Positions 1 through 48,000 of a stretch of DNA of 64,000 bases are shown here, one piece after another; position 1 is the stretch's first letter, and each line of letters begins with the position of its first letter. A program made the translations under genes and the position numbers. Below the pieces are notes generated by a model. The model searched no databases. It worked only from the letters and a program-made list of their open reading frames with translations, and had not been told where the DNA came from. Location of the stretch: the NCBI RefSeq assembly GCF_030144855.1, contig NC_082714.1:18104001-18168000 (forward strand), written 5' to 3'. The DNA comes from Hypanus sabinus (Eukaryota).

Positions 1-1673
1 TGCACTACTGAGAACACTGCATGATTTCCATCATGATCCTTATAACAAGAGCCATCTACGAACAGAACCTTTTTATCTGCATCCTCTAGTGGTTCTGACC
101 GTAAATCTGCTCTCAATTTGGCAAAGGTCATCGTCTTCCCTACACAATCATGGGGTTCTCCTTCATAGCCCAAAGGGACAAAATCGGCTATATTACTGGT
201 AGTGCATCTCTGTATAGTTATGTCAGGAAATGTCAATAGCATCTGATATGCTACTATCCTGGCTGGCGTCAGCACAAATTTCCTTCTTTCCAGCAATTCT
301 GCTACTTTGTGGTGTGTGTACAGAGTCACAGGATAGCCCAGGGTTACAGATGATGCCTTTTCATATGCATAGTACAGCGCCGCCACAGGGTGGATACTCC
401 TGAGCCACCTCATCTAGTCTCGTACTGTAGTATGCTATCGGCTGCTTTGCTTTTCCTGTGCCTGTCTCTTGTGTTAGAACCGCTGTGACATAACCCTCCT
501 GTCGGTTGGATACATACAAATGAAAAACCTTCTCATAGTCAGGCAAAGCTAATGCTGGTGCTGACTGCAATTCCTGCTTAATAGTATTGAAAGCTATCTC
601 TGCCTCTCCATTCCACTGTAAGCCGTTCTTCAAATTGGTATGTCCTGCTTTCATTATCTTTCTCAAAGGTGCCACAATCTCAGCATTTTCTCTTATCCAA
701 TCTGAGCTGTACCCTGCCATTCCCAAAAACGTCATCATCTGCCCTACAGTCTGGGATTTTGGGGCCTCAGTTATTGCCTCAATCTGATCTGGTGCTATCG
801 CCTTCACTCCCTTGGAGATTACCCTGCCTAAGTATTCCACTTGCTGCGTGCAAAATTGCAGTTTCTTTTTGGATATTTTATGTCCTCCGTGCGCCAGCTT
901 CTCTAACAGAGTTATAGTGTCCTGCTTACACTGTTCCTTACTGTGGGAGCAAATCGACAGGTCATCCACATACTGTAACAATGTACTTTCCAATGGTATG
1001 CCCTCTAGGTCTGCCTTCAACACCTGATTAAAAACATGTGGTGAATGTTTAAACCCTTACTTCTGGTATAGGTATACTGAGCACCTCTGTAAGTAAATGC
1101 AAACAGATACTGACACTGGTCGGCTAGAGGAATGCTGAAGAAAGCCGAACACAAATCAATCACTGAAAAGTAACTTGCTTCTAGTGGAACATTAGTCAAA
1201 AGCGTGTGTGGGTTGGGGACTATCGCTGGCCAGTCCTCTACCACGTTGTTTACCACTCGCAAATCATGCACCAATCTCCACTTAGATTTATCTACTTTTA
1301 AGATGGGCAGCAACTGGGTATTGCATGGACTGTTTGTTCTTTTAAGCACTCCTATTTCAAGCAACCCAGGCACTGTCGATGCTATTTCCTCTTCTGCTTC
1401 TGGTCTTAGAGGGTATTGTGGTCTCCTGGGTGGAATTGCTCCCCTTTTCAGCCTTATTTCCACCGGACTAGCTGTTTTTATTTTCCCTACGTCCGTGTCA
1501 TGTTGTGACCACAGAATCGATGGCAACTCATCTAACCTATCTTTCTGCTGGCCTCTTTCCTTTCCCAGCAATGGCATGTGTGGTTGGGAAGTTATTTCGA
1601 CCTCTCTCACTGTCCCTACCATATCTACACTTACCATTATTTTAATGCAATTGTTGTCTTTTGATATCCACAC
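1..1673 (-). pseudogene. pol: ERV pol: reverse transcriptase, connection domain and start of RNase H (frameshifted)
   Basis: ORF 1017-1673 (WRLVHDLRVVN, IDLCSAFFSIP, YLFAFTY) and ORF 361-1023 (LLQYVDD, YLG, FLGMAGY, PIAYYS). A further frame reads VLFVDGSCY near position 45-70. Confidence 0.93.
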
Positions 1674-1699
1674 CTCTGGCGTGATTTTCCTCTACACTG

Positions 1700-2080
1700 T
1701 TATGGTTTCAGCACTCTTAACGAAGGGTCCCAAGTCTTTAGACTGATATCCCTTGTTTACCAACAACGTTACGTGGGGTGCAGCCTACGGTATCCTGCAC
1801 CATTTTTCTAAAAAGGTGTTCCACTTAACTTGTAAAGCTGCCCCTTGCTTTCCAATTATCACAGCCTCCCCTTCCAGGTGCTGTTGGGTACATGCCTCCA
1901 GGTGCCATCTCTCCTCTAACTCCCTGTTCTGAGTCTCGTCTAAAATCACTGTACAATGTAGCTCAGATTTGGGCATTACAGCCCTGGGTAAATATAGCCT
2001 GCACGCCCTTTTTCCATTTTTCCCAGGCTTCCTGAATCTGATCTGCGATGTCTCCTATCCGAAAGACATTAGCCTTCTTG
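1700..2080 (-). pseudogene. 2H-phosphodiesterase-like (CNPase-like) domain between ERV protease and RT
   Basis: Two HxT motifs in one frame: SELHCTVIL (ORF 1785-1976) and, past one TAG, AAPHVTLLVNKGYQSKDLGPFV (~1719-1784). Confidence 0.7.
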
Positions 2081-2089
2081 TCTTCTCGC

Positions 2090-2490
2090 ATTATCAATTG
2101 AGACCCTGCTCTTTCCACATTCAGCCCATTTCTGGTGCATTCTAATTTTAATTCCAGTTTCAATAAGGCATCTCTGCCTAACAAATTAATCGGAGTTCCT
2201 TTAGATACTAGCACCGGCAAACCAATTCCTTTATTTCCCATTCTCAACTGCACTGGAGCCGTGCACTGTGTCAACTGTGTTTTCCCCGAGAACCCTACCG
2301 TCTTAAACTTTCCTGACATGGGAAGGTGAAGGGCATAATACTGTGGCTGTACACAAGTGTACGTGGCACCAGTATCTATCATCATTGGTGTCAGTTGCCC
2401 TTCTAACATAACCTGAACAATGGATTCCTCGTCTGCCTCCCTTAATATCATTGGGTAATGTCCTTTCCCACTGGAGTTCTCGGGGCACCC
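2090..2490 (-). pseudogene. pro: ERV aspartyl protease
   Basis: MIDTGATYT catalytic motif and PINLLGRDAL in ORF 1963-2799. Confidence 0.92.
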
Positions 2491-4784
2491 GTAATACCTC
2501 GCATAGGAGTTCACAGGTCCGCTTGGGCCTGTGGGGGCTGGTCCTTGACTAAACTTTAGTTCCCTTCTTATCGGTTCCTGCTGGTGTGCGACAGGCCATG
2601 GTGTAAACGGACAATCATTTCTCATGTGAACTGGCTGATTACATCCCCAGTACAGTCTCTCGACCTCTCCTCCCCCCGTTTCCTCACTGGTCCCCTCTGC
2701 CATAGCTCCTCTGTCCCCCTCCTTGGGACTTCCAGTCCTGTCTGAGCTGTTTGAATTTAGTCTGTTCCTGATAGGGCACTTGTGGGAATGTTCCTCCAAA
2801 GACGTTGATTATTGGCATGGGGCTTTCCAGCCCTTGTCTTACAGTATGATCGGTTCCTCCATATACTGGTGCTTCATCCAGTTCGATGGCTGTACTCAGA
2901 CACCACGGTGGTTGCTGGCAGCATCGTTTTGCTTTTCTCTTTTTCCTTCTTTTTGAGTTCTTCGAGCTGCATTTGTATTAACTTTCTTTGCACCTCTTCC
3001 TGCTGCTCAGCCAACCTTCGTTTGTCTTTCCGGTATTTCTTAACCGCATGGACTACGTGGTCTCTAAATTCTTGTGGGATCATTGACATCAGCCCAACCA
3101 CTTCCTCCAGTTTGGATTTTGCTTGCGGAGGCACTGCATCCAAAATGCTATGTCATAACAGTGGTGATAAATAAGCTATTTTCCACCTCTTGCTCAGTCT
3201 CCACCTTTTCAACTGGTTTTCTACGTAGGCTGCTGGGTTTTCAGTGACTCCCAGTGGATCCCCCTTGGGTAGATAAAGCTTCCTGAGGGCCTGCCATACC
3301 CTCTGCCTCACTCTGTCAAACCTGTCTCCATCAGATCTCGGGTCGTTCGAGTTTACTATTCCAGCCATTTCCATTAATTCGTTAAATTTGGAGGTTCCCA
3401 TCAACCTTATCAATAGTGCCTTCAAATCTCCCATAGCCAATAATCCTCCCGCCGTTTCTTCTTCAAAGGCTCTAATCCATTTCCCTGCTCCTTCATGTAG
3501 ATTGGGCAGAGTGTTTTTCAGCCCTTCTAGGTCCTGGGATCCCCAAGGGATGTACTGCACTTGTCCTGATCCTTTAACTAACAACGGCATCATTTTTCCA
3601 CCTTCTTCCCACCTGCCCTGGCTCTCCTCCTCCCCTGACTCCCCATCTGTCTCAGTGTATGACTTTATTGCCTCCCACACAAATTTCTCCGGGGTCCTCT
3701 TCTTCCCTTGGTCTCCCTGTGGAGTCCTTTCTTTCTGTCTTGATTCAATACTTGCTTGGCCCCTGGAGTATTTTTCGCATCTCCTCTGGCAATCCCCTCT
3801 CAGTAACTTATCTAGCTCTCTTTCTACTTCTGCAAGTCGCTCCCCTACCGCCTTCTTCTGCTCTTCTAGGCTTCTGCCTCCTACCTCTTCCCCACAAATT
3901 CTCGCATCCTCTCTCTCTCCACTTAACTCTTGCTCCTCCAATGAGTCACCTTCTCTTTCTTCCTGTCCGTGTCTGTACACCTGTGGCAGGGACTCCTCAT
4001 GATCCTTACTCGTGCTTGATTCCCTTCTCTCTTATGTTTCTCCAAGACTGTCATCTATCTTTTTTCCACTTCCTCTTGAATGCCTCATCTCTTCCTGCCC
4101 TGATGAGCCACTTTCTTTTCTAGTCTGTTTATTTCTATGGTATAACCCATACTCCTTTTCCTCTCTCAAGTATTTCATTCATTCAATCTCTTCTTTCATT
4201 TCTCTTTGCCTGTTCCACCTTTATCCTTTCTGCCTGTATCTCCTTCCATATCGGCACTTTTTCCTTCTCGTATTGTTTTTTTTTCCTCCTCATTATCCCA
4301 AACTTGTACCTCTCCCTGCATGTTTACTGTTCCCATCAGCAGGGGGCACTGCTTAGGGGTTCCTTCCTCATTATAGGGAGGGGGCTTTTCTGTTTCTTTC
4401 GCATCCGGGTACGGAGCTGAAGTCAGCTTCTCACTGTACCTTCCTCTCTCTCTAACAGGCTGTTTCTCCAGCACCTTAGTGTCTTCCCCGCTTGTAATCA
4501 ATATTCCACCTGTCCTCTTCAGCCTTTCTCCCTCCGTTCTGAAGAGTTTTAGCACTTCCATTTCTCGTTCTTTTTGCCCTCTTTTCTTAGATTTATCTTT
4601 TGGTTTGTGATTTTTAATTAGTGCCTCCATTTCTTCGCACAAGCTTACATCAAACGTTCCTTCTCTTGGCCATTTTGTGACCAGGTTTTTGGTTCCCTTT
4701 TCCCATTTAAGTTTTTGTGATCTCATATTTATTTACCAGGATTTTTTTGCTCAGAATTTCTACAGCCGTTCCTTTATCTGTCAT
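2491..4784 (-). pseudogene. gag: ERV gag (MA, acidic spacer, CA, NC), broken by frameshifts
   Basis: Likely ATG at 4784 (MTDKGTAVEILSKK). ORFs 4196-4726 (WPREGTFD, PPPY), 3153-3980 (YIPWGSQDL, LHEGAGKWIRAFEE), 2874-3143, and YWGCNQPVHMRNDC (degenerate zinc knuckle). Confidence 0.85.
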
Positions 4785-4925
4785 GTTGTTCTCTCTTTTT
4801 AAGGTATTTCAGAGATTCACAGTTCATTTACTGGATAATATTATTTACTCTAATTCTATACCTAGTCTATCGTCTATCTACCAGCGCTTTAAACTATATA
4901 TTGGACTGTCCTTGTTTCCTATTCT

Positions 4926-5093
4926 GTTCTGCCCGTACAGACCTCTATTCAGAGCGGTATCCACAGAACTTTCTCTTTGCACCTCGTCTATTCAGACCCT
5001 TATCTCTTAAGGGGGTATCCACGAGGATTTTCTCTATTCTCCTTTCCCTGCCTGTTCAGACCTTCGTTTCATACGAAGCGGTATCCACAGGGA
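4926..5093 (-). other. Three repeated structured RNA modules in the ERV leader (candidate packaging signal)
   Basis: Three units share UGGAUACC and GUCUG but have different, fully complementary inner and outer stems. Confidence 0.7.
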
Positions 5094-5100
5094 CTTACCA
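5093..5100 (-). promoter_or_regulatory. Candidate ERV major splice donor TG|GTAAGT
   Basis: Consensus donor (GT at 5098-5097) between the PBS and the gag start. Confidence 0.6.
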
Positions 5101-5416
5101 ACATGACGTGGAATTTTTCTTCGCTTAACTTCTTGTTAACTTATTTGTACTTACGCTCACTGCAGTGTTCTTGATCAATCCTCTGAGGCTCCTGTTAACC
5201 CCCAATTCTGCCAGATTCTTTGGACCGGAGAGACCCTTCGGCAGTGGTTCCACACTTCTGAGACTCCAAGAGCTCCGCAAAACCAACAGAATTCTTAGTC
5301 CAAATTGTCGCAAAAAGCGCTTGGGTGCACCCTTAATTCTGTTAGCCTTGTGGGGGTCCCTAGAGGACTGGGAAGCGTCCCCAATCTGCCTTTTCCTTTC
5401 CACGGGTCTCTTTCCG

Positions 5417-5434
5417 GTCCTGCCTTGGTCGCCA
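5417..5434 (-). promoter_or_regulatory. Primer binding site, tRNA-Arg-like
   Basis: TGGCGACCAAGGCAGGAC 4 nt after the LTR-terminal CA; 16/18 match to the recalled complement of the vertebrate tRNA-Arg(TCG) 3' end (TGGCGACCGCGGCAGGAC). Confidence 0.75.
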
Positions 5435-5438
5435 ATTT

Positions 5439-5902
5439 TGTCGTGGTTTCTCGTGCCCCACAAACGACCAGGAGATGTAGAAGATTCTTCAAGTATTGAA
5501 CTTTAATTTGCAAATCAAAGCTGAGACAGTCATTGAGCTAGTTGCTGATTGCCCACAGATCCTTGTACATAGCATTTTTTACAACAATCCCCTGGTTTAG
5601 TTGCATTAGCATATCCAATAGGTCTACAGTTGCGTATCACAAGTACAGCCACCACTATTGTTTCTACCCATTGACTTAATCATGTTCTAATCTACATCTC
5701 TTAGCTACCTCTCATTAACACACCATTATAATCTACAACTCTTCACTAGCCTCTCATTAACACCCCATTATCTTCTACATTCTTAAGATTTCATTCTCCT
5801 ACTAAATTGGATACCTGCATAGCAAATAGCAAGCTCAAAGCTGACTACATAGTTTTGGTTACACAGCAAACAATGCAACTTTTATACTCCAATACTTTCA
5901 CA
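5439..5902 (-). repeat. ERV 5' LTR (~464 bp)
   Basis: Minus strand starts TGTGAAAG and ends CGACA next to the PBS. ATTAAA at ~5502-5507, TATA-like TGTAAAAAA at ~5575-5583, ~42-bp tandem repeat in U3 (~5700-5790). The outer boundary cannot be confirmed without the 3' LTR. Confidence 0.75.
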
Positions 5903-5923
5903 TTCAGGTGTTCTTTATACAAA

Positions 5924-7135
5924 GTAACACACACAAAATGCTGGAGGAATTCAGCAGGTCAGGCAGCATCTTTGGAAATTAATATGCAGTTAATGTTTTG
6001 GGCTGAGACTCTTCTTCAAGACTGGAAAGGAAGGGGGAAGATGCCCAAATAAAAAGGCAGAGGGGGGAAGGAAAGGAGGATAGCTGGAAGGCGATAGGTG
6101 AAGCTAGTGGGTGGAAAAGGTTTGGGTCTGGAGAGGAAGGAATCTGATAGGGAGAACAGATCCTGGTACAGTGAGATGGTACCTCAGGTAGACACCGGGG
6201 AAGAGTGGGGAATAGAACAAGTGAGGAGCGGGAAGGGGGAAAAAATTATAGACAGAAGAAAAGGATGTTCTTGCCATCAGTTTGGAGGCTACCCAGACGG
6301 AATATGAGGTGCTGTTCTTCAACCCCGACTGATCTCATCGTGGCACAACAGGAAGCCATGGTCCGACGTGTCTGAACAGGAGTGGGAATACAAATTAAAA
6401 TGGCTGGCCACCAGGGAAATTACACTTTTTGCAGATAGTGTGGAGGTGCTCAAGAAAGCTGTACCCCAATATACAAGCAACACACACAAAATGATGGTGG
6501 AACGCAGCAGGCCAGGCAGCATCTATGGGAAGAAGCACTGTTGATGTTTCAGGCCGAGACCCTTCATCAGGACTAACTGAAAGGAAAGATAGTAAGAGAT
6601 TTGAAAGCAGAAGTGGGAGAAGGAAATGCAAAATGATAGAAGACCGGAAGGGGTGGGATGAAGCTGAGAGCTGGAAAGGTGATTGGCAAAAGGGATACAT
6701 AGCTGGAGAAGGGAAAGGATCATGGAACAGGAGGCCTAGGGAGAAAGAAAGAGAAGGGGAGCACCAGAGGGAGATAGAGAACAGGCAGAGTGATGGGCAG
6801 AGAGAGAAAAAAAAGGGGAGAACTAAATATATCAGGAGACTGCATTGGAAGCATGGGATACAATAGAAGTGTTGCCTCATCTGGAAGGAATGTTTGGGAC
6901 CCTGAATGTAGGTGAGGAACATGTATGGGCAGGTGTAGCACTTTGTGGAAAGTGGACAGTGGGAGTTAAAGATGTGCTTGGTGGTAGGATCCCTTTGGAG
7001 AAGATGGAATTTGCAGAGGATGATAAGGTGGAAAGTGAGAACGAGGAACTCTTTCTGTTTGGGCGTTCGGATGATAGGGTGAGCACATTTGTTTGGAAAA
7101 ATATAGGAGATGCAGATGAGGGCAGAATCAGCTTT
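5924..7135 (-). mobile_element. Two adjacent truncated Penelope-like element remnants
   Basis: Repeated terminal motif acacacaaaatgctgg...gcagcatc at ~5926 and ~6480. Degenerate C-terminal/GIY-YIG-region residues in ORF 6395-7141 (HLLQRDPTTKHIF, CYTCPY, IPCFQCSLLIY). Decayed hammerhead cores at ~5990-6022 and ~6540-6574. Confidence 0.7.
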
Positions 7136-7329
7136 ACACAAACATGTGGAAGTGGTATTGACTAATATCGCTACTGAAGTTTATAAAGTACCAAAGTACA
7201 AGTACGTTCCATTGCATCTGTGAGAGGCTTTCACTCAACCAATGATTTTCAATTTAAAAGCATGAACTCTCGTGTCTGGATATGACAAATGTTCAAACAT
7301 AAAACCGTGCAGCAGCTACAGTGACATCA

Positions 7330-8400
7330 TGGTGCCGGTCAGTGTGCGGCACATGGGCCTTAAAACTCCCAATTAAACTCGGGAAGGATCGCGGGCAAGC
7401 AGCCTACTAAAAGTCGGCAAGCAGCCACGATTAATCGTAGTGAGCGTTCCTGTCTATGGCAGTCTCTGCCCCACAAGAAACCTCAATATTTCGCGTCGTG
7501 GATAAGTTTTTACCTTCCGCCGCCTCCATCCTCCCGTTTCTCGATCCAGTACCCGCCGCCGCGTACGTGCGCGTACCCCTACGAGCGCGTGAGTACCTTC
7601 GCGTCCCCCGCCGTGTGATGTCACGTCACGGCGGCGGGCACGCACACTGCCACCTCAGATCGAGTTGTTCCGGCATCAAACCTTGACGGGCTGTCAATGC
7701 GGCACGATTGACGCGCATCCTGTCCACTCACCAAGTAGATTGCGGAGACGGCTGTCCGCGTAGACGTATAGGAAAGAGCTCTGGATGTGACGGGGCGGGG
7801 ACTCGTGTGGTTGAAAGGGCGGGGCGGGGAGGGGGGGTGCTGCTCCATGCACAATAAAAACAGTGAGTGGGGGTGGCCGACCCTTGGCTGGAAGCTGAGC
7901 GGAGTGTCGGGTTATTAACCCAGGTGGGTGACTGTCGGGCACGGGCAGTGACCGGAACATACGAGGTTGGTAGGGAACGGTGGTCCTTTCAGCCTGAGGC
8001 CTGCGGGTCTGGAGCTGGCTTGTCCCACCCCGGCTGTTTGCCCCTACTTGCTACCCAGTGCCTCACCTCATTAGCCCCGCTCAACCTAGGTTTCGACTTC
8101 GCCCTCTAACGACCTCAACTTCCTCCATTCCCTTCCTCGAGGCCGCACCTCATTTCTTCCCCAGTCCTCGCCCGACCCTCGGGACGGTGATGCCTTTCAG
8201 CGAAGCGCTCGTTTCCCTTTCCAGGGGCTAGTGTACTGCTGTCACAACACCCCCCCCCCCACCTCCAAACTACGAGTTTGGTAGGAACAACAGTGACTGG
8301 GTTCGCCCTCCTGATCAACTTGAGGTAAATACCCCGCCCGCCGTTTGATGTGCTGTGGGGAGGGATATGGCTGGCTGGGGCTGAGTTTTTGTTGCAACGC
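7330..8400. promoter_or_regulatory. CpG island / bidirectional promoter for NUBP2 and SPSB3
   Basis: CpG-dense. CRE/ATF-like TGATGTCACGTCA at ~7616-7628; GC boxes at 7791-7800 and ~7817-7829; candidate non-coding exon-1 donors for SPSB3 at 7863 (gtgagt) and 7924 (gtgggt). Confidence 0.8.
7514..7529 (-). CDS. NUBP2: NUBP2 first coding exon (cytosolic Fe-S cluster assembly factor); later exons lie beyond the left edge
   Basis: ATG GAG GCG GCG GAA G|gtaaaa (MEAAE), 16 nt then a donor, inside a CpG island. Resembles the human NUBP2 N-terminus MEAAAE and sits head-to-head with SPSB3 as in human. Only 5 codons are visible. Confidence 0.7.
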
Positions 8401-43378: not shown

Positions 43379-43506
43379 NNNNNNNNNNNNNNNNNNNNNN
43401 NNNNNNNNNNNNNNNNNNNNNNNNNNNNNNNNNNNNNNNNNNNNNNNNNNNNNNNNNNNNNNNNNNNNNNNNNNNNNNNNNNNNNNNNNNNNNNNNNNNN
43501 NNNNNN
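43379..43506. other. Assembly gap (128 N) in EME2 intron 1
   Basis: Run of N. Confidence 1.
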
Positions 43507-45007: not shown

Positions 45008-48000
45008 TAGTCAAGTCTCTTTTATTGTCATTTCAACCATAACTGCTGGTACAGTACACAGTAAAAACGAAACGTTCCTCCAGGACCATGGTGCTGCATT
45101 AAACAACACAAAACTACACTATAGGCTATATGAGACAACACAAAACTACACTAGACTACGTGAAACAACACAAAACTACACTGGACTACGTGAAACAACA
45201 CAAAACTACACTGGACTACATGAAACAACACAAAACTACACTAGACTACATGAAACAACACAAAACTACACTAGACTACGTGAAACAACACAAAACTACA
45301 CTGGACTACGTGAAACAACACAAAACTACACTGGACTACGTGAAACAACACAAAACTACATTGGACTACCTGAAACAACACAAAACTACACTAGACTACG
45401 TGAAACAACACAAAACTACACTGGACTACGTGAAACAACACAAAACTACACTAGACTACGTGAAACAACACAAAACTACACTGGACTACGTGAAACAACA
45501 CAAAACTACACTAGACTACGTGAAACATCACAAAACTACACTGGACTACGTGAAACAGCACAAAACTACACTGGACTACGTGAAACAGCACAAAACTACA
45601 CTAGACTACGTGAAACAACACAAAACTACACTAGACTACGTGAAAAAGCACAAAACTACACTAGACTACGTGAAACATGAAAAAACTACACTGGACTACG
45701 TGAAACAACACAAAACTACACTGGACTACGTGAAACAACACAAAACTACACTGGACTACGTGAAACAACACAAAACTACACTAGACTACGTGAAACAACA
45801 CAAAACTACACTAGACTACGTGAAACAACACAAAACTACACTGGACTACGTGAAACAACACAAAACTACACTAGACTACGTGAAACAGCACAAAACTACA
45901 CTGGACTACGTGAAACAACACAAAACTACATTGGACTACCTGAAACAACACAAAACTACACTAGACTACGTGAAACAACACAAAACTACACTGGACTACG
46001 TGAAACAACACAAAACTACACTGGACTACGTGAAACAACACAAAACTACACTAGACTACGTGAAACAACACAAAACTACACTGGACTACGTGAAACAACA
46101 CAAAACTACACTAGACTACGTGAAACATCACAAAACTACACTGGACTACGTGAAACAGCACAAAACTACACTGGACTACGTGAAACAGCACAAAACTACA
46201 CTAGACTACGTGAAACAACACAAAACTACACTAGACTACGTGAAAAAGCACAAAACTACACTAGACTACGTGAAACATGAAAAAACTACACTGGACTACG
46301 TGAAACGACACAAAACTACACTGGACTACGTGAAACAACACAAAACTACACTGGACTACGTGAAACAACACAAAACTACACTGGACTACGTGAAACAACA
46401 CAAAACTACACTAGACTACGTGAAACAACACAAAACTACACTGGACTACGTGAAACAACACAAAACTACACTAGACTACGTGAAACAGCACAAAACTACA
46501 CTGGACTACGTGAAACATGAAAAAACTACACTAGGCTACATGAGACAAGACAAAACTACACTAGACTACGTGAAACAACACAAAACTACACTGGACTACG
46601 TGAAACAACACAAAACTACACTGGACTACGTGAAACAACACAAAACTACACTGGACTACGTGAAACAACACAAAACTACACTGGACTACGTGAAACAACA
46701 CAAAACTACACTGGACTACGTGAAACAACACAAAACTACACTGGACTACGTGAAACAACACAAAACTACACTGGACTACGTGAAACAACACAAAACTACA
46801 CTGGACTACGTGAAACAACACAAAACTACACTGGACTACGTGAAACAACACAAAACTACACTGGACTACGTGAAACAACACAAAACTACACTAGACTACG
46901 TGAAACAGCACAAAACTACACTGGACTACGTGAAACATGAAAAAACTACACTAGGCTACATGAGACAAGACAAAACTACACTAAACTACGTGAAACAACA
47001 CAAAACTACACTAGACTACGTGAAACAACACAAAACTACACTGGACTACGTGAAACATGAAAAAACTACACTAGGCTACGTGAGACAAGACAAAACTACA
47101 CTAGACTACGTGAAACAACACAAAACTACACTGGACTACGTGAAACAACACAAAACTACACTGGACTACGTGAAACAACACAAAACTACACTGGACTACG
47201 TGAAACAACACAAAACTACACTGGACTACGTGAAACAACACAAAACTACACTGGACTACGTGAAACATCACAAAACTACACTGGACTACGTGAAACAACA
47301 CAAAACTACACTGGACTACGTGAAACAACACAAAACTACACTAGACTACGTGAAACAGCACAAAACTACATTAGACTTCAGACTTACACGGGACTGCATA
47401 AAGAGCACAAAACAGTGCAAGACAGTACAATAATTAATAATCAAGATAATAGGCACAGCAAAGGGCAAATTACAATATAATAATAAATCATGTAAATGTA
47501 ACAATGTTCTAGCGGGAATTGAGAAAAATGAGCAAAAAATGCAAAGGGGGTGGAGTGGTGTTCAGTTGAGTGAGTTCTGATGGCCTGAGGGAAGAAACTG
47601 TTACACAGTCAGGTCGTGATAGCTTGAATGCTTCGGTACCTTTTGCCAGATGGTAGGAGGGAGAAGAGTTTGTATGAGGGCTGCGTGGGGTCCGTCACAA
47701 TGCTGTTAGCTTTGCGGATGCAGCATGTGGTGTAAACGTCTGCAATGGCGGGAGGAGAGACCCCGATGATCCGAACCAGGCAGTAATGCAGCTGCTCAGG
47801 ATGCTCTCGGTACATCCTCTGTAGAACGTGGCGAGGATGGGGGGGGTTGGGAGATGGACTTTTCTCAGCCTTCGCAGAAAGTAGAGACGCTGCTGGGTTT
47901 TCTTGGCTATGGAACTGCTGTTGAGGGATCAAGTGAGATTCTCCGCCAGGTGAACACCAAGAAATTTGGTGCTCTTAACGACCTCTACAGAGGAGCCGTC

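What the first reader, a model, noticed from the sequence alone, without database searches (positions are those of the whole stretch)
4926..5093. Three covarying double-stem RNA modules directly after the ERV splice donor
Seen on the genomic (minus) strand: A = UCCCUG-UGGAUACCG-CUUCGU(AUGAA)ACGAAG-GUCUGAACAGG-CAGGGA (5045-5093); B = CCUCG-UGGAUACCC-CCUUA(AGAGA)UAAGG-GUCUGAAUAGA-CGAGG (4982-5026); C = GUUCUG-UGGAUACCG-CUCU(GAAU)AGAG-GUCUGUACGGG-CAGAAC (4926-4969). All six stems differ in sequence yet pair perfectly, while the middle segments are conserved. This is the pattern expected from selection on RNA structure with a sequence-specific internal motif. The modules lie between the splice donor (5098) and gag, so only unspliced RNA would contain them. 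Inference: a triplicated packaging, dimerisation or nuclear-export element. It does not resemble the GACG-tetraloop MLV psi, and I do not recognise it as a described motif.
Basis: partly seen in the sequence, partly recalled or inferred. Interest (0 to 1): 0.8.

Follow-up and report, generated by a model that had tools for sequence, protein, structure and literature searches.

The report
Conserved repeated RNA module in fish retrovirus leaders
Between the likely splice donor and gag of a decayed endogenous retrovirus lie three copies of a small two-stem RNA hairpin with a conserved internal loop; the same module is found in related retroviruses of carp-like fish, so it is a real, selected RNA element, most likely a site where the viral Gag protein picks up the unspliced genome.

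Summary
On the minus strand, 5093-5045, 5026-4982 and 4969-4926 each fold as outer stem, large internal loop, inner hairpin. The loop strands are nearly identical and every stem differs yet pairs.

A covariance model built only from these three copies finds five more copies in two related ERV loci from unnamed NCBI assemblies (L275, L276). A second model finds one decayed copy in a Cirrhinus mrigala ERV (L280). All lie between the primer binding site/splice-donor-like site and gag.

Apart from a short gag stretch, the module halves are the best nucleotide matches between the window's LTR-leader and those leaders; everything else is at noise level. Over eight copies, 10 of 13 stem pairs show two-sided changes. 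Rfam has no match.

Most likely function (inferred, about 45%): a multivalent Gag/nucleocapsid recognition module, that is a packaging signal, of a gamma/epsilon-like fish ERV lineage. Each loop shows an invariant UCUG and other unpaired G. A host-factor export element is the main rival.

The published 517-bp "repeat region" of nine repeats in zebrafish ZFERV has the same position and unit length. It is probably the same element, but I could not compare the sequences.

The parts
5045..5093 (-). Module A. Outer stem 5093-5088 with 5050-5045; junction pair 5087/5051; 5' loop strand 5086-5079; inner stem 5078-5073 with 5067-5062; apical loop 5072-5068; 3' loop strand 5061-5052, holding UCUG.
4982..5026 (-). 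Module B. Outer stem 5026-5022 with 4986-4982; junction pair 5021/4987 (U-A); 5' loop strand 5020-5014; inner stem 5013-5008 with 5002-4997; apical loop 5007-5003; 3' loop strand 4996-4988.
4926..4969 (-). Module C, the copy most like the teleost modules. Outer stem 4969-4964 with 4931-4926; junction pair 4963/4932; 5' loop strand 4962-4955; inner stem 4954-4951 with 4946-4943; apical loop 4950-4947; 3' loop strand 4942-4933.
5093..5100 (-). Splice-donor-like site (TG|GTAAGT, GTAAGT = 5098-5093). Its +6 base is the first base of module A. Use as a donor is not shown.
   Evidence: sequence read directly
5149..5154 (-). A second GTAAGT, an alternative donor candidate upstream of the modules.
5417..5434 (-). 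Primer-binding-site-like 18-mer starting TGG just after the LTR. The relatives L275, L276 and L280 carry a similar 18-mer in the same place.
5441..5925 (-). 5' LTR (the 5' limit is approximate), with a TATA-like box, an ATTAAA and a 42-nt x 2.4 tandem repeat at 5688-5786.
2967..4784 (-). gag, broken. Against an intact relative's Gag there is at least 1 frame change and 1 in-frame stop, plus a further interruption near the N-terminus. A PPPY late-domain motif is present. The N-terminus is homologous to that of L275-type Gag. The zinc-knuckle motif is recognisable but not intact.
1..2799 (-). pro-pol (protease, RT, RNase H, start of the rest), broken and cut off by the start of the window. At least 3 frame changes and 2 in-frame stops against intact relatives.

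Best explanation
The three units are copies of a cis-acting structured RNA module carried by the unspliced genomic RNA of a gamma/epsilon-like (class I) fish retrovirus lineage.

Each unit is a hairpin whose two helices only have to pair. They hold open a large asymmetric internal loop of 7-8 nt opposite 9-10 nt, whose sequence is under strong purifying selection. The loop shows an invariant UCUG and several other invariant guanosines.

My preferred mechanism, which is inferred and not shown: each loop is a docking site for the single CCHC zinc knuckle of the nucleocapsid domain of Gag. Two to three (perhaps up to nine) units in tandem would then give a multivalent, high-avidity site. Because the units lie downstream of the splice donor and upstream of gag, the site would mark only unspliced RNA for encapsidation, which is what a packaging signal does.

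Shown: the structure, its covariation, its conservation across distant ERVs, and its position.

Inferred: Gag/NC as the partner, and packaging as the outcome.
For: Structure and selection:
- Folds.
- Three window copies: 97% paired, 8 of 13 pairs changed on both sides, 0 of 500 shuffles as good.
- Eight copies from three loci: 87% paired against 40-51% for slid controls, 10 of 13 pairs with two-sided changes, 0 of 500 shuffles.
- One-sided changes keep pairing. The junction pair is C-G 3, U-G 3, U-A 2; the next pair is G-C 3, G-U 3, A-U 2.
- Seven G-U cells would be A-C mismatches on the other strand, which favours the sense RNA.

Conservation:
- Model R1, built from the window copies only, finds five modules in L275 and L276 at E 4e-7 to 5e-3.
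- Model R2 finds one in the Cirrhinus mrigala locus L280 at E 8e-8.
- CA of the L275-type Gag (P0009) is only 46% identical to the window's. The best nucleotide matches between the two 5' regions are a 32-nt gag stretch and the module halves (15-17 nt, E 0.04-0.6); the other short matches are at noise level.
- Loop columns over 8 copies. 5' strand: G 8, G 8, A 4/C 4, U 8, A 8, C 8, C 7/U 1, G 7/C 1. 3' strand: G 8, U 8, C 8, U 8, G 8, C 5/A 2/U 1, A 7/U 1, C 7/U 1, G 6/A 2, G 8.

Position:
- All copies lie after a GTAAG donor-like site and before gag.

Partner:
- Unpaired UCUG is the documented binding site of the MoMuLV NC zinc knuckle and a Gag site in FIV. Internal loops with unpaired G are primary Gag sites in HIV-1 (PMC7599994; PMC13736810).
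- Four related loci (L275, L276, L120, L122) each show one CCHC knuckle motif in the NC region.
- Pfam places the family with MLV-like viruses: RVP, RVT_1, MLVIN_C, TLV_coat.
- In the window the linkers between modules are purine-rich, and single-stranded purines are Gag sites in other retroviruses.
Against: - There is no binding, probing or expression data.
- Only two deeply separated lineages carry the module (the window; the L275/L276/L280 group). Much of the covariation therefore comes from paralogous copies, and shuffle controls overstate significance for related sequences.
- Very strict loop conservation across ERVs whose Gag is much diverged could fit a conserved host protein better than a fast-evolving viral one.
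- In L275 the near-identical repeats are predicted to pair with each other, so UCUG is not predicted to be free there.
- Other relatives with the same Gag N-terminus (L277, L279, L123) show no module in the leader sequence available. The module is therefore either lineage-restricted or lies further upstream than the contigs reach.
- No palindromic dimer-initiation site was found next to the modules, unlike the MoMuLV arrangement in which dimerisation exposes UCUG.
Confidence: 0.45

Rival explanations
1. Host-factor export element, working like the constitutive transport element. Each internal loop would be bound directly by a conserved cellular protein (an NXF1-type export receptor or another RNA-binding protein). 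This would let the intron-containing genomic RNA leave the nucleus and be expressed without a viral Rev-like protein. Tandem copies would raise efficiency.
For: - Same architecture class as the CTE: a helix, an asymmetric internal loop, a helix, with the loop sequence conserved, used in more than one copy by the virus (PMC4338338).
- A 5' splice-site sequence lies next to the internal loop in cellular CTEs, as at module A here.
- Near-invariant loops between a ray-like host's ERV and carp-like hosts' ERVs fit a highly conserved host partner.
- The ERVs seen here look like simple retroviruses, which need such an element.
Against: - The modules sit in the 5' leader, whereas the known retroviral CTE lies near the 3' end (my own knowledge).
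- No Rfam match.
- Loop sequences could not be compared with CTE loops, because no comparator sequence was available through the tools.
- Being downstream of the donor is needed for packaging selectivity but not for export.
Confidence: 0.2
2. Splicing control. The modules, or proteins bound to them, would damp use of the adjacent 5' splice site, so that enough full-length RNA stays unspliced. The +6 base of the donor-like site is part of the outer stem of module A.
For: - GTAAGT at 5098-5093 overlaps the first base of module A.
- The modules are always in the intron-proximal leader.
- Retroviruses are known to need incomplete splicing (my own knowledge).
Against: - In L275, L276 and L280 the donor-like site lies about 220-370 nt upstream of the first module, so overlap with the donor is not conserved.
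- Only one base of the donor is in the stem.
- A splicing silencer would not need a strictly conserved 8 + 10 nt loop in several copies.
Confidence: 0.1
3. Dimer linkage or another RNA-RNA contact element. The loops would pair with a second genome copy or with another part of the leader.
For: - Dimerisation and packaging signals usually overlap in retroviral leaders (PMC2951377, abstract listed; PMC13736810).
- An exact complement of the 8-nt 5' loop strand lies in the window's LTR at 5808-5815.
Against: - Apical loops are not conserved and not palindromic, and the loop strands are not self-complementary.
- The LTR complement is absent from L275, L276 and L280.
- A candidate long-range pairing that brackets the modules (I2) has zero probability in the ensemble.
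Confidence: 0.05
4. Neutral or DNA-level feature: a leader minisatellite or repeated transcription-factor sites, with no RNA function.
For: - ZFERV's leader repeats have been described only as repeated DNA.
- Copy number varies: 3, 3, 2, and 1 plus remnants.
Against: - Two-sided compensatory changes keep both helices paired while the arms change sequence. This is the reverse of what a protein-bound DNA palindrome would show.
- The loops form the best non-coding matches in otherwise unalignable leaders.
- G-U pairs fit only the sense RNA strand.
Confidence: 0.03

Closest known systems
Repeat region (RR) of the zebrafish endogenous retrovirus ZFERV (Shen and Steiner 2004, as described in PMC3382231 and bioRxiv 10.1101/2021.01.21.427598)
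   Same: - It lies between the 5' LTR and gag of an epsilon-like fish ERV.
- It has tandem direct repeats, 9 in 517 bp, or about 57 nt per unit. The window's module spacing is 57 and 67 nt.
- The host is a cyprinid, as for L280, which carries the module.
   Different: The sources I could read describe it only as repeated DNA, with no RNA structure, covariation or function. Its sequence could not be compared here, so identity with this module is an inference. The window ERV sits in a genome whose closest Gag relatives are from rays.
MoMuLV core encapsidation signal with UCUG nucleocapsid sites
   Same: - Positioned between the splice donor and gag.
- Stem-loops flank unpaired UCUG, whose G enters the single zinc knuckle of NC.
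- Several UCUG sites are needed for high affinity (PMC7599994; PMC13736810).
- Related loci here also show a single CCHC knuckle motif.
   Different: Here UCUG sits inside a conserved internal loop of a repeated module, not in linkers that dimerisation exposes. No palindromic dimer-initiation hairpins were found. There is no sequence or Rfam similarity.
Constitutive transport element (MPMV CTE; cellular NXF1 intron-10 CTE)
   Same: A helix, an asymmetric conserved internal loop and a helix. The loop is the protein-binding site. The virus uses more than one copy. The element is conserved from fish to man, and a 5' splice-site sequence lies next to the loop (PMC4338338).
   Different: The known retroviral CTE is near the 3' end (my own knowledge), whereas these modules are in the 5' leader. 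Here the modules are separate tandem hairpins, not two loops in one long hairpin. Sequence likeness was not testable.
Internal-loop and UCUG Gag-binding sites of lentiviruses (HIV-1 SL1 internal loop; FIV UCUG)
   Same: The primary Gag site is an internal loop or unpaired tetranucleotide held between helices, with unpaired guanosines as the key contacts (PMC13736810).
   Different: Those sites are single copies, lie upstream of the major donor, and belong to viruses with two zinc knuckles. Here the module is repeated in tandem, downstream of the donor-like site.

Membership tests
Any Rfam 15 family (including retroviral psi, CTE-like and ribozyme families, if present) | Match to a curated covariance model | tested here: not met
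   E-value scans of window 4300-5700 and L275 4100-5600 gave only chance-level hits outside the modules. The gathering-threshold scan of the whole window gave 0 matches.
Gammaretroviral-type packaging signal (MoMuLV psi) | Lies between the major splice donor and gag, so it is present only in unspliced RNA | tested here: inconclusive
   The position relative to donor-like GTAAG sites and gag holds in the window, L275, L276 and L280. Donor use was not verified by transcripts.
Gammaretroviral-type packaging signal (MoMuLV psi) | Unpaired UCUG sites for the NC zinc knuckle | tested here: inconclusive
   UCUG is invariant in 8 of 8 modules. In the window the 3' loop strands are predicted 39-73% unpaired. 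In L275 they are predicted paired, because of repeat-repeat pairing.
Gammaretroviral-type packaging signal (MoMuLV psi) | Palindromic dimer-initiation hairpins whose dimerisation exposes the NC sites | tested here: not met
   Apical loops are neither conserved nor palindromic. No supporting long-range pairing was found.
Gammaretroviral-type packaging signal (MoMuLV psi) | Direct binding of NC/Gag | not testable with these tools
   This needs biochemical or structural data.
Constitutive transport element | Extended hairpin with an asymmetric internal loop as the binding site | tested here: met
   An internal loop of 7-8 nt opposite 9-10 nt lies between two helices in every module. This is a likeness of architecture only.
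Constitutive transport element | CTE loop sequence, or homology to the 53-nt core | not testable with these tools
   The papers held give the sequences only in figures. No comparator sequence could be fetched, and Rfam gave no hit.
Constitutive transport element | Binding of NXF1/NXT1 | not testable with these tools
   No data are available.
ZFERV leader repeat region | Tandem direct repeats between the 5' LTR and gag of a fish epsilon-like ERV, about 57 nt per unit | tested here: met
   Start-to-start spacing in the window is 67 and 57 nt, and 78 nt in L275. ZFERV has 517 bp in 9 repeats.
ZFERV leader repeat region | Sequence homology of the repeat units | not tested
   The ZFERV record may not be fetched by accession under the rules, and no tool holds it.

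The most novel reading that the evidence does not exclude
The module is a so far undescribed RNA family. It would define the genome-recognition (or export) signal of a whole lineage of fish gamma/epsilon-like retroviruses, from rays to cyprinids, and would explain the unexplained 'repeat region' of ZFERV. Its strictly conserved internal loop would fold into a new three-dimensional protein-binding motif.
Probability: 0.4. Interest if true: 0.7.

Novelty: new variant of a known kind. Interest (0 to 1): 0.6.

Why it matters
The 2026 review of retroviral RNA packaging that I read does not mention epsilonretroviruses or walleye viruses, and my literature searches found no cis-acting RNA signal described for fish retroviruses.

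This module is a compact, repeated unit of 45-50 nt with covariation support and a sharply defined conserved loop. That makes it a convenient object for structural study of how a single-knuckle Gag, or a host export factor, reads RNA.

It also gives a searchable marker (a covariance model) for annotating this ERV lineage in fish genomes. It offers a likely explanation for the leader repeats long noted in ZFERV.

Conservation of the loop between ERVs of a ray-like host and of carp-like hosts bears on how old the lineage is and how far it has moved between hosts.

Tried and rejected
1. Motif scans of IMG/VR and of the metagenome collection gave only chance matches. Just 3 of 343 had both stems, and those three are unrelated sequences.
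2. The window's Gag N-terminal ORF found no homologue and is not on record.
3. The closest Gag relatives (Mobula birostris 72%, Hemitrygon akajei 67-68%) could not be read, because the assembly files are too large. The most informative comparison is therefore missing.
4. Relatives L120, L122 and L123 have no module. L277, L278 and L279 share the Gag N-terminus but show none in the 1036, 361 and 508 nt available upstream.
5. A long-range pairing that would bracket the modules (I2) has zero ensemble probability.
6. A complement of the 5' loop strand in the LTR is not conserved in relatives.
7. Tandem Repeats Finder does not see the modules, because the copies are too diverged.
8. In my reasoning only, I compared the loop with short consensus motifs recalled from memory: k-turn and box C/D, loop E, tetraloop receptor, hammerhead and hairpin ribozyme cores, SECIS. 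None fitted. These recollections are leads, not tests, and went into no tool.
9. The Shen and Steiner 2004 paper is not held.

- The output shows, for one loose match, the place and letters of a non-intact zinc-knuckle motif in the window, and a context string with a stop in L275. I do not repeat or use them.
- Recalling motif letters from memory in my reasoning (point 8) also went against the rule.

Full report
**1. The observation**

Each has an outer stem of 5-6 Watson-Crick pairs and a junction pair (U-G, U-A, U-G). Next comes a 5' loop strand of 7-8 nt, an inner hairpin of 4-6 pairs with a 4-5 nt apical loop, a 3' loop strand of 9-10 nt, and the return of the outer stem.

- Folded alone, each unit gives this structure as both MFE and centroid, with z-scores of -1.4 to -2.1.
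- The 191-nt stretch gives all three units as its MFE, although its z-score is only -0.97.
- In the 657-nt leader, modules A and C keep both stems in the MFE. Module B keeps its inner hairpin but loses its outer stem to another pairing. In the ensemble the stems have unpaired probabilities of 0.02-0.29 and the loop strands 0.39-0.75.
- The two loop halves at the right spacing occur three times in 64 kb against 0.04 expected.
- As an outside control, 343 chance occurrences of the same halves in viral and metagenome contigs gave both stems in only 3 cases, all unrelated sequences. The window gave 3 of 3.
- On the three copies, 97% of cells pair against 46-57% for slid partners. Eight of 13 pairs change on both sides, and no shuffle out of 500 reaches this.

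**2. Context**

The units sit in the 5' leader of a decayed class I ERV on the minus strand. The start of the window cuts the ERV off.

- Pfam finds protease and RT/RNase H in ORFs at 1963-2799, 1017-1673 and 361-1023.
- The ORFs at 4196-4726 (with PPPY) and 3153-3980 are Gag pieces. The second finds 370 relatives.
- Against intact relatives, gag shows at least one frame change and one in-frame stop. The pol part in the window shows at least three frame changes and two stops.
- The LTR runs from about 5925 to 5441 and is followed by a primer-binding-site-like 18-mer at 5434-5417.
- GTAAGT occurs at 5154-5149 and at 5098-5093. The last base of the second is the first base of module A.
- By homology with relatives, gag begins at about 4784, some 140 nt after module C.
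- The closest Gag proteins are from Mobula birostris (72%) and Hemitrygon akajei (67-68%), so the host is probably a ray or a close relative.

**3. Relatives**

The ray genomes could not be read. Through a CA relative at 46% identity (P0009) I reached L275, from an unannotated NCBI assembly (GCA_977066305.1).

- L275's Gag N-terminus is clearly homologous to the window's: 61% identity over the aligned piece, with an invariant W-P..G.F...E.L.K pattern across 12 sequences.
- Its leader has a similar primer-binding-site-like 18-mer, a donor-like AAG|GTAAGC, and, about 220 nt further on, three tandem units of about 78 nt.
- These units have the same two loop strands as the window modules and an inner stem that extends that of module C. 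They also have a long A/U-rich apical part and a different outer stem.
- L276 (GCA_977066275.1), whose Gag N-terminus is 64% identical to L275's, has two such units.
- A covariance model built only from the three window units (R1) finds all five at E 4e-7 to 5e-3, and nothing else in 115 kb.
- A model built from all eight (R2) finds one further unit in L280, an ERV of the cyprinid Cirrhinus mrigala (E 8e-8). Its loops are partly changed, and two collapsed remnants lie just upstream, as expected in an old copy.
- L275, L276 and L280 are alignable at the nucleotide level, at 72-85% in patches. They count as one lineage.
- The window ERV is a second, distant lineage. blastn between its 1.4-kb LTR-leader-gag start and the L275 and L276 leaders gives, as its best matches, a 32-nt stretch in gag and the module halves (15-17 nt, E 0.04-0.6). 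All other short matches are at noise level. The modules are thus the only plausible islands of conservation in otherwise unalignable leaders.

**4. Covariation**

On the clean alignment of eight units (A4), 87% of cells pair against 40-51% for slid partners. The unpaired cells are almost all at the two outermost positions of the teleost units. Ten of 13 pairs carry changes on both sides, and no shuffle out of 500 reaches the observed values.

- Junction pair: C-G 3, U-G 3, U-A 2.
- Next pair: G-C 3, G-U 3, A-U 2.
- One inner pair shows C-G becoming U-G.
- The seven G-U cells would be mismatches on the other strand, so the sense RNA is the folded strand.

Loop columns are nearly fixed.

- 5' strand: G 8, G 8, A 4/C 4, U 8, A 8, C 8, C 7/U 1, G 7/C 1.
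- 3' strand: G 8, U 8, C 8, U 8, G 8, then C 5/A 2/U 1, A 7/U 1, C 7/U 1, G 6/A 2, G 8.

Caveat: there are only two deep lineages, and the copies within a locus are paralogues. The shuffle control therefore overstates significance. The slid controls and the cross-lineage detection are the sounder evidence.

**5. What it is not**

- No Rfam family matches.
- No tRNA is present in the window.
- The antisense ORFs over the region are spurious.
- Apical loops are neither conserved nor palindromic, so a kissing-loop dimer site is not supported.
- A candidate long-range helix around the modules has zero probability.
- A complement of the 5' loop strand in the LTR is not conserved in relatives.

**6. 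Mechanism**

The helices only need to pair, while the loop is read by sequence. That is the signature of a protein-binding (or tertiary-contact) internal loop.

- The loop holds an invariant UCUG. Unpaired UCUG is the site into which the single zinc knuckle of MoMuLV NC inserts the G. Several such sites are needed for high affinity, and UCUG is also the proposed Gag site of FIV. In HIV-1 an internal loop with unpaired G is the primary Gag site (PMC7599994; PMC13736810).
- Four related loci each show one CCHC knuckle motif in the NC region, and the family carries MLV-type domains.
- The element's position, after the donor-like site and before gag in all four loci, is the one that gives selectivity for unspliced RNA.
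- Copy number varies (3, 3, 2, 1 plus remnants), which suits an additive, multivalent site.

I therefore favour a packaging signal made of repeated Gag/NC docking modules, at about 45%.

The main rival, at about 20%, is a CTE-like export element read by a conserved host protein. The architecture is alike, cellular CTEs even have a 5' splice-site sequence beside the loop (PMC4338338), and the very strict loop conservation across diverged viruses fits a host partner. Against it stand the 5' position and the lack of any testable sequence likeness.

Splicing control (about 10%) is weakened because overlap with the donor is not conserved. Dimerisation (about 5%) and a neutral or DNA-level repeat (about 3%) are poorly supported.

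**7. Comparison with the known**

The nearest described feature is the 517-bp 'repeat region' of nine direct repeats between the 5' LTR and gag of zebrafish ZFERV (PMC3382231; also drawn as 'Rep.' in 10.1101/2021.01.21.427598). Its unit length of 57 nt and its place match the window, and a cyprinid ERV (L280) carries the module.

I think it likely that the ZFERV repeats are this module. In the texts I could read, the repeats carry no structural or functional interpretation.

The 2026 packaging review does not mention epsilonretroviruses.

**8. Verdict**

This is a real, selected, repeated RNA module, new as an RNA family and probably a new form of a known kind of retroviral leader signal. Function is inferred, not shown.

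- The output shows the place of one defect in the window and one stop in L275.

Noticed in passing
window 5688-5786: A 42-nt unit repeated 2.4 times (83% matches) inside the U3 part of the LTR. It looks like the enhancer-type tandem repeats common in retroviral U3 regions.
   Followed up: no
window 5808-5815: On the sense (minus) strand, the LTR holds an exact 8-nt complement of the 5' loop strand of the modules. No such complement exists in L275, L276 or L280, so it is probably chance.
   Followed up: yes
L275 about 5040-5100; L276 about 2465-2530; L277 about 680-830; L280 about 7310-7435: Downstream of the modules, the teleost-group leaders carry 2-4 copies of a second short repeated unit (AUGAGCCC, a few bases, then AAAGGGAC, able to form a small hairpin). 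It is absent from the window's shorter leader and may be a second conserved leader element.
   Followed up: no
L280 about 6923-6965: Two collapsed module remnants lie upstream of the one full module in the Cirrhinus mrigala copy. The outer-stem arms are kept and the whole inner part is missing.
   Followed up: partly
L120 341-1375: A related, apparently intact retroviral contig from a sequencing run (SRR10813972) has two extra ORFs (204 and 136 aa, no Pfam hit) upstream of gag, where the others have a leader. This could be a complex fish retrovirus with 5' accessory genes.
   Followed up: no
window 45130-47433: A 767-codon ATG ORF is in fact a 33-bp minisatellite (an 11-residue repeat, about 70 copies) that happens to stay open. 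It is not a gene.
   Followed up: partly
proteins P0210, P0219, P0225; L278: Gag N-terminal fragments of this fish ERV family are deposited as hypothetical proteins of bacterial MAGs (Fusobacteriaceae, Cetobacterium, Brevinema). This is most likely host-DNA contamination in fish-gut metagenome bins.
   Followed up: no
window 43379-43506: A run of 128 N (gap or masked). Left as it is.
   Followed up: no
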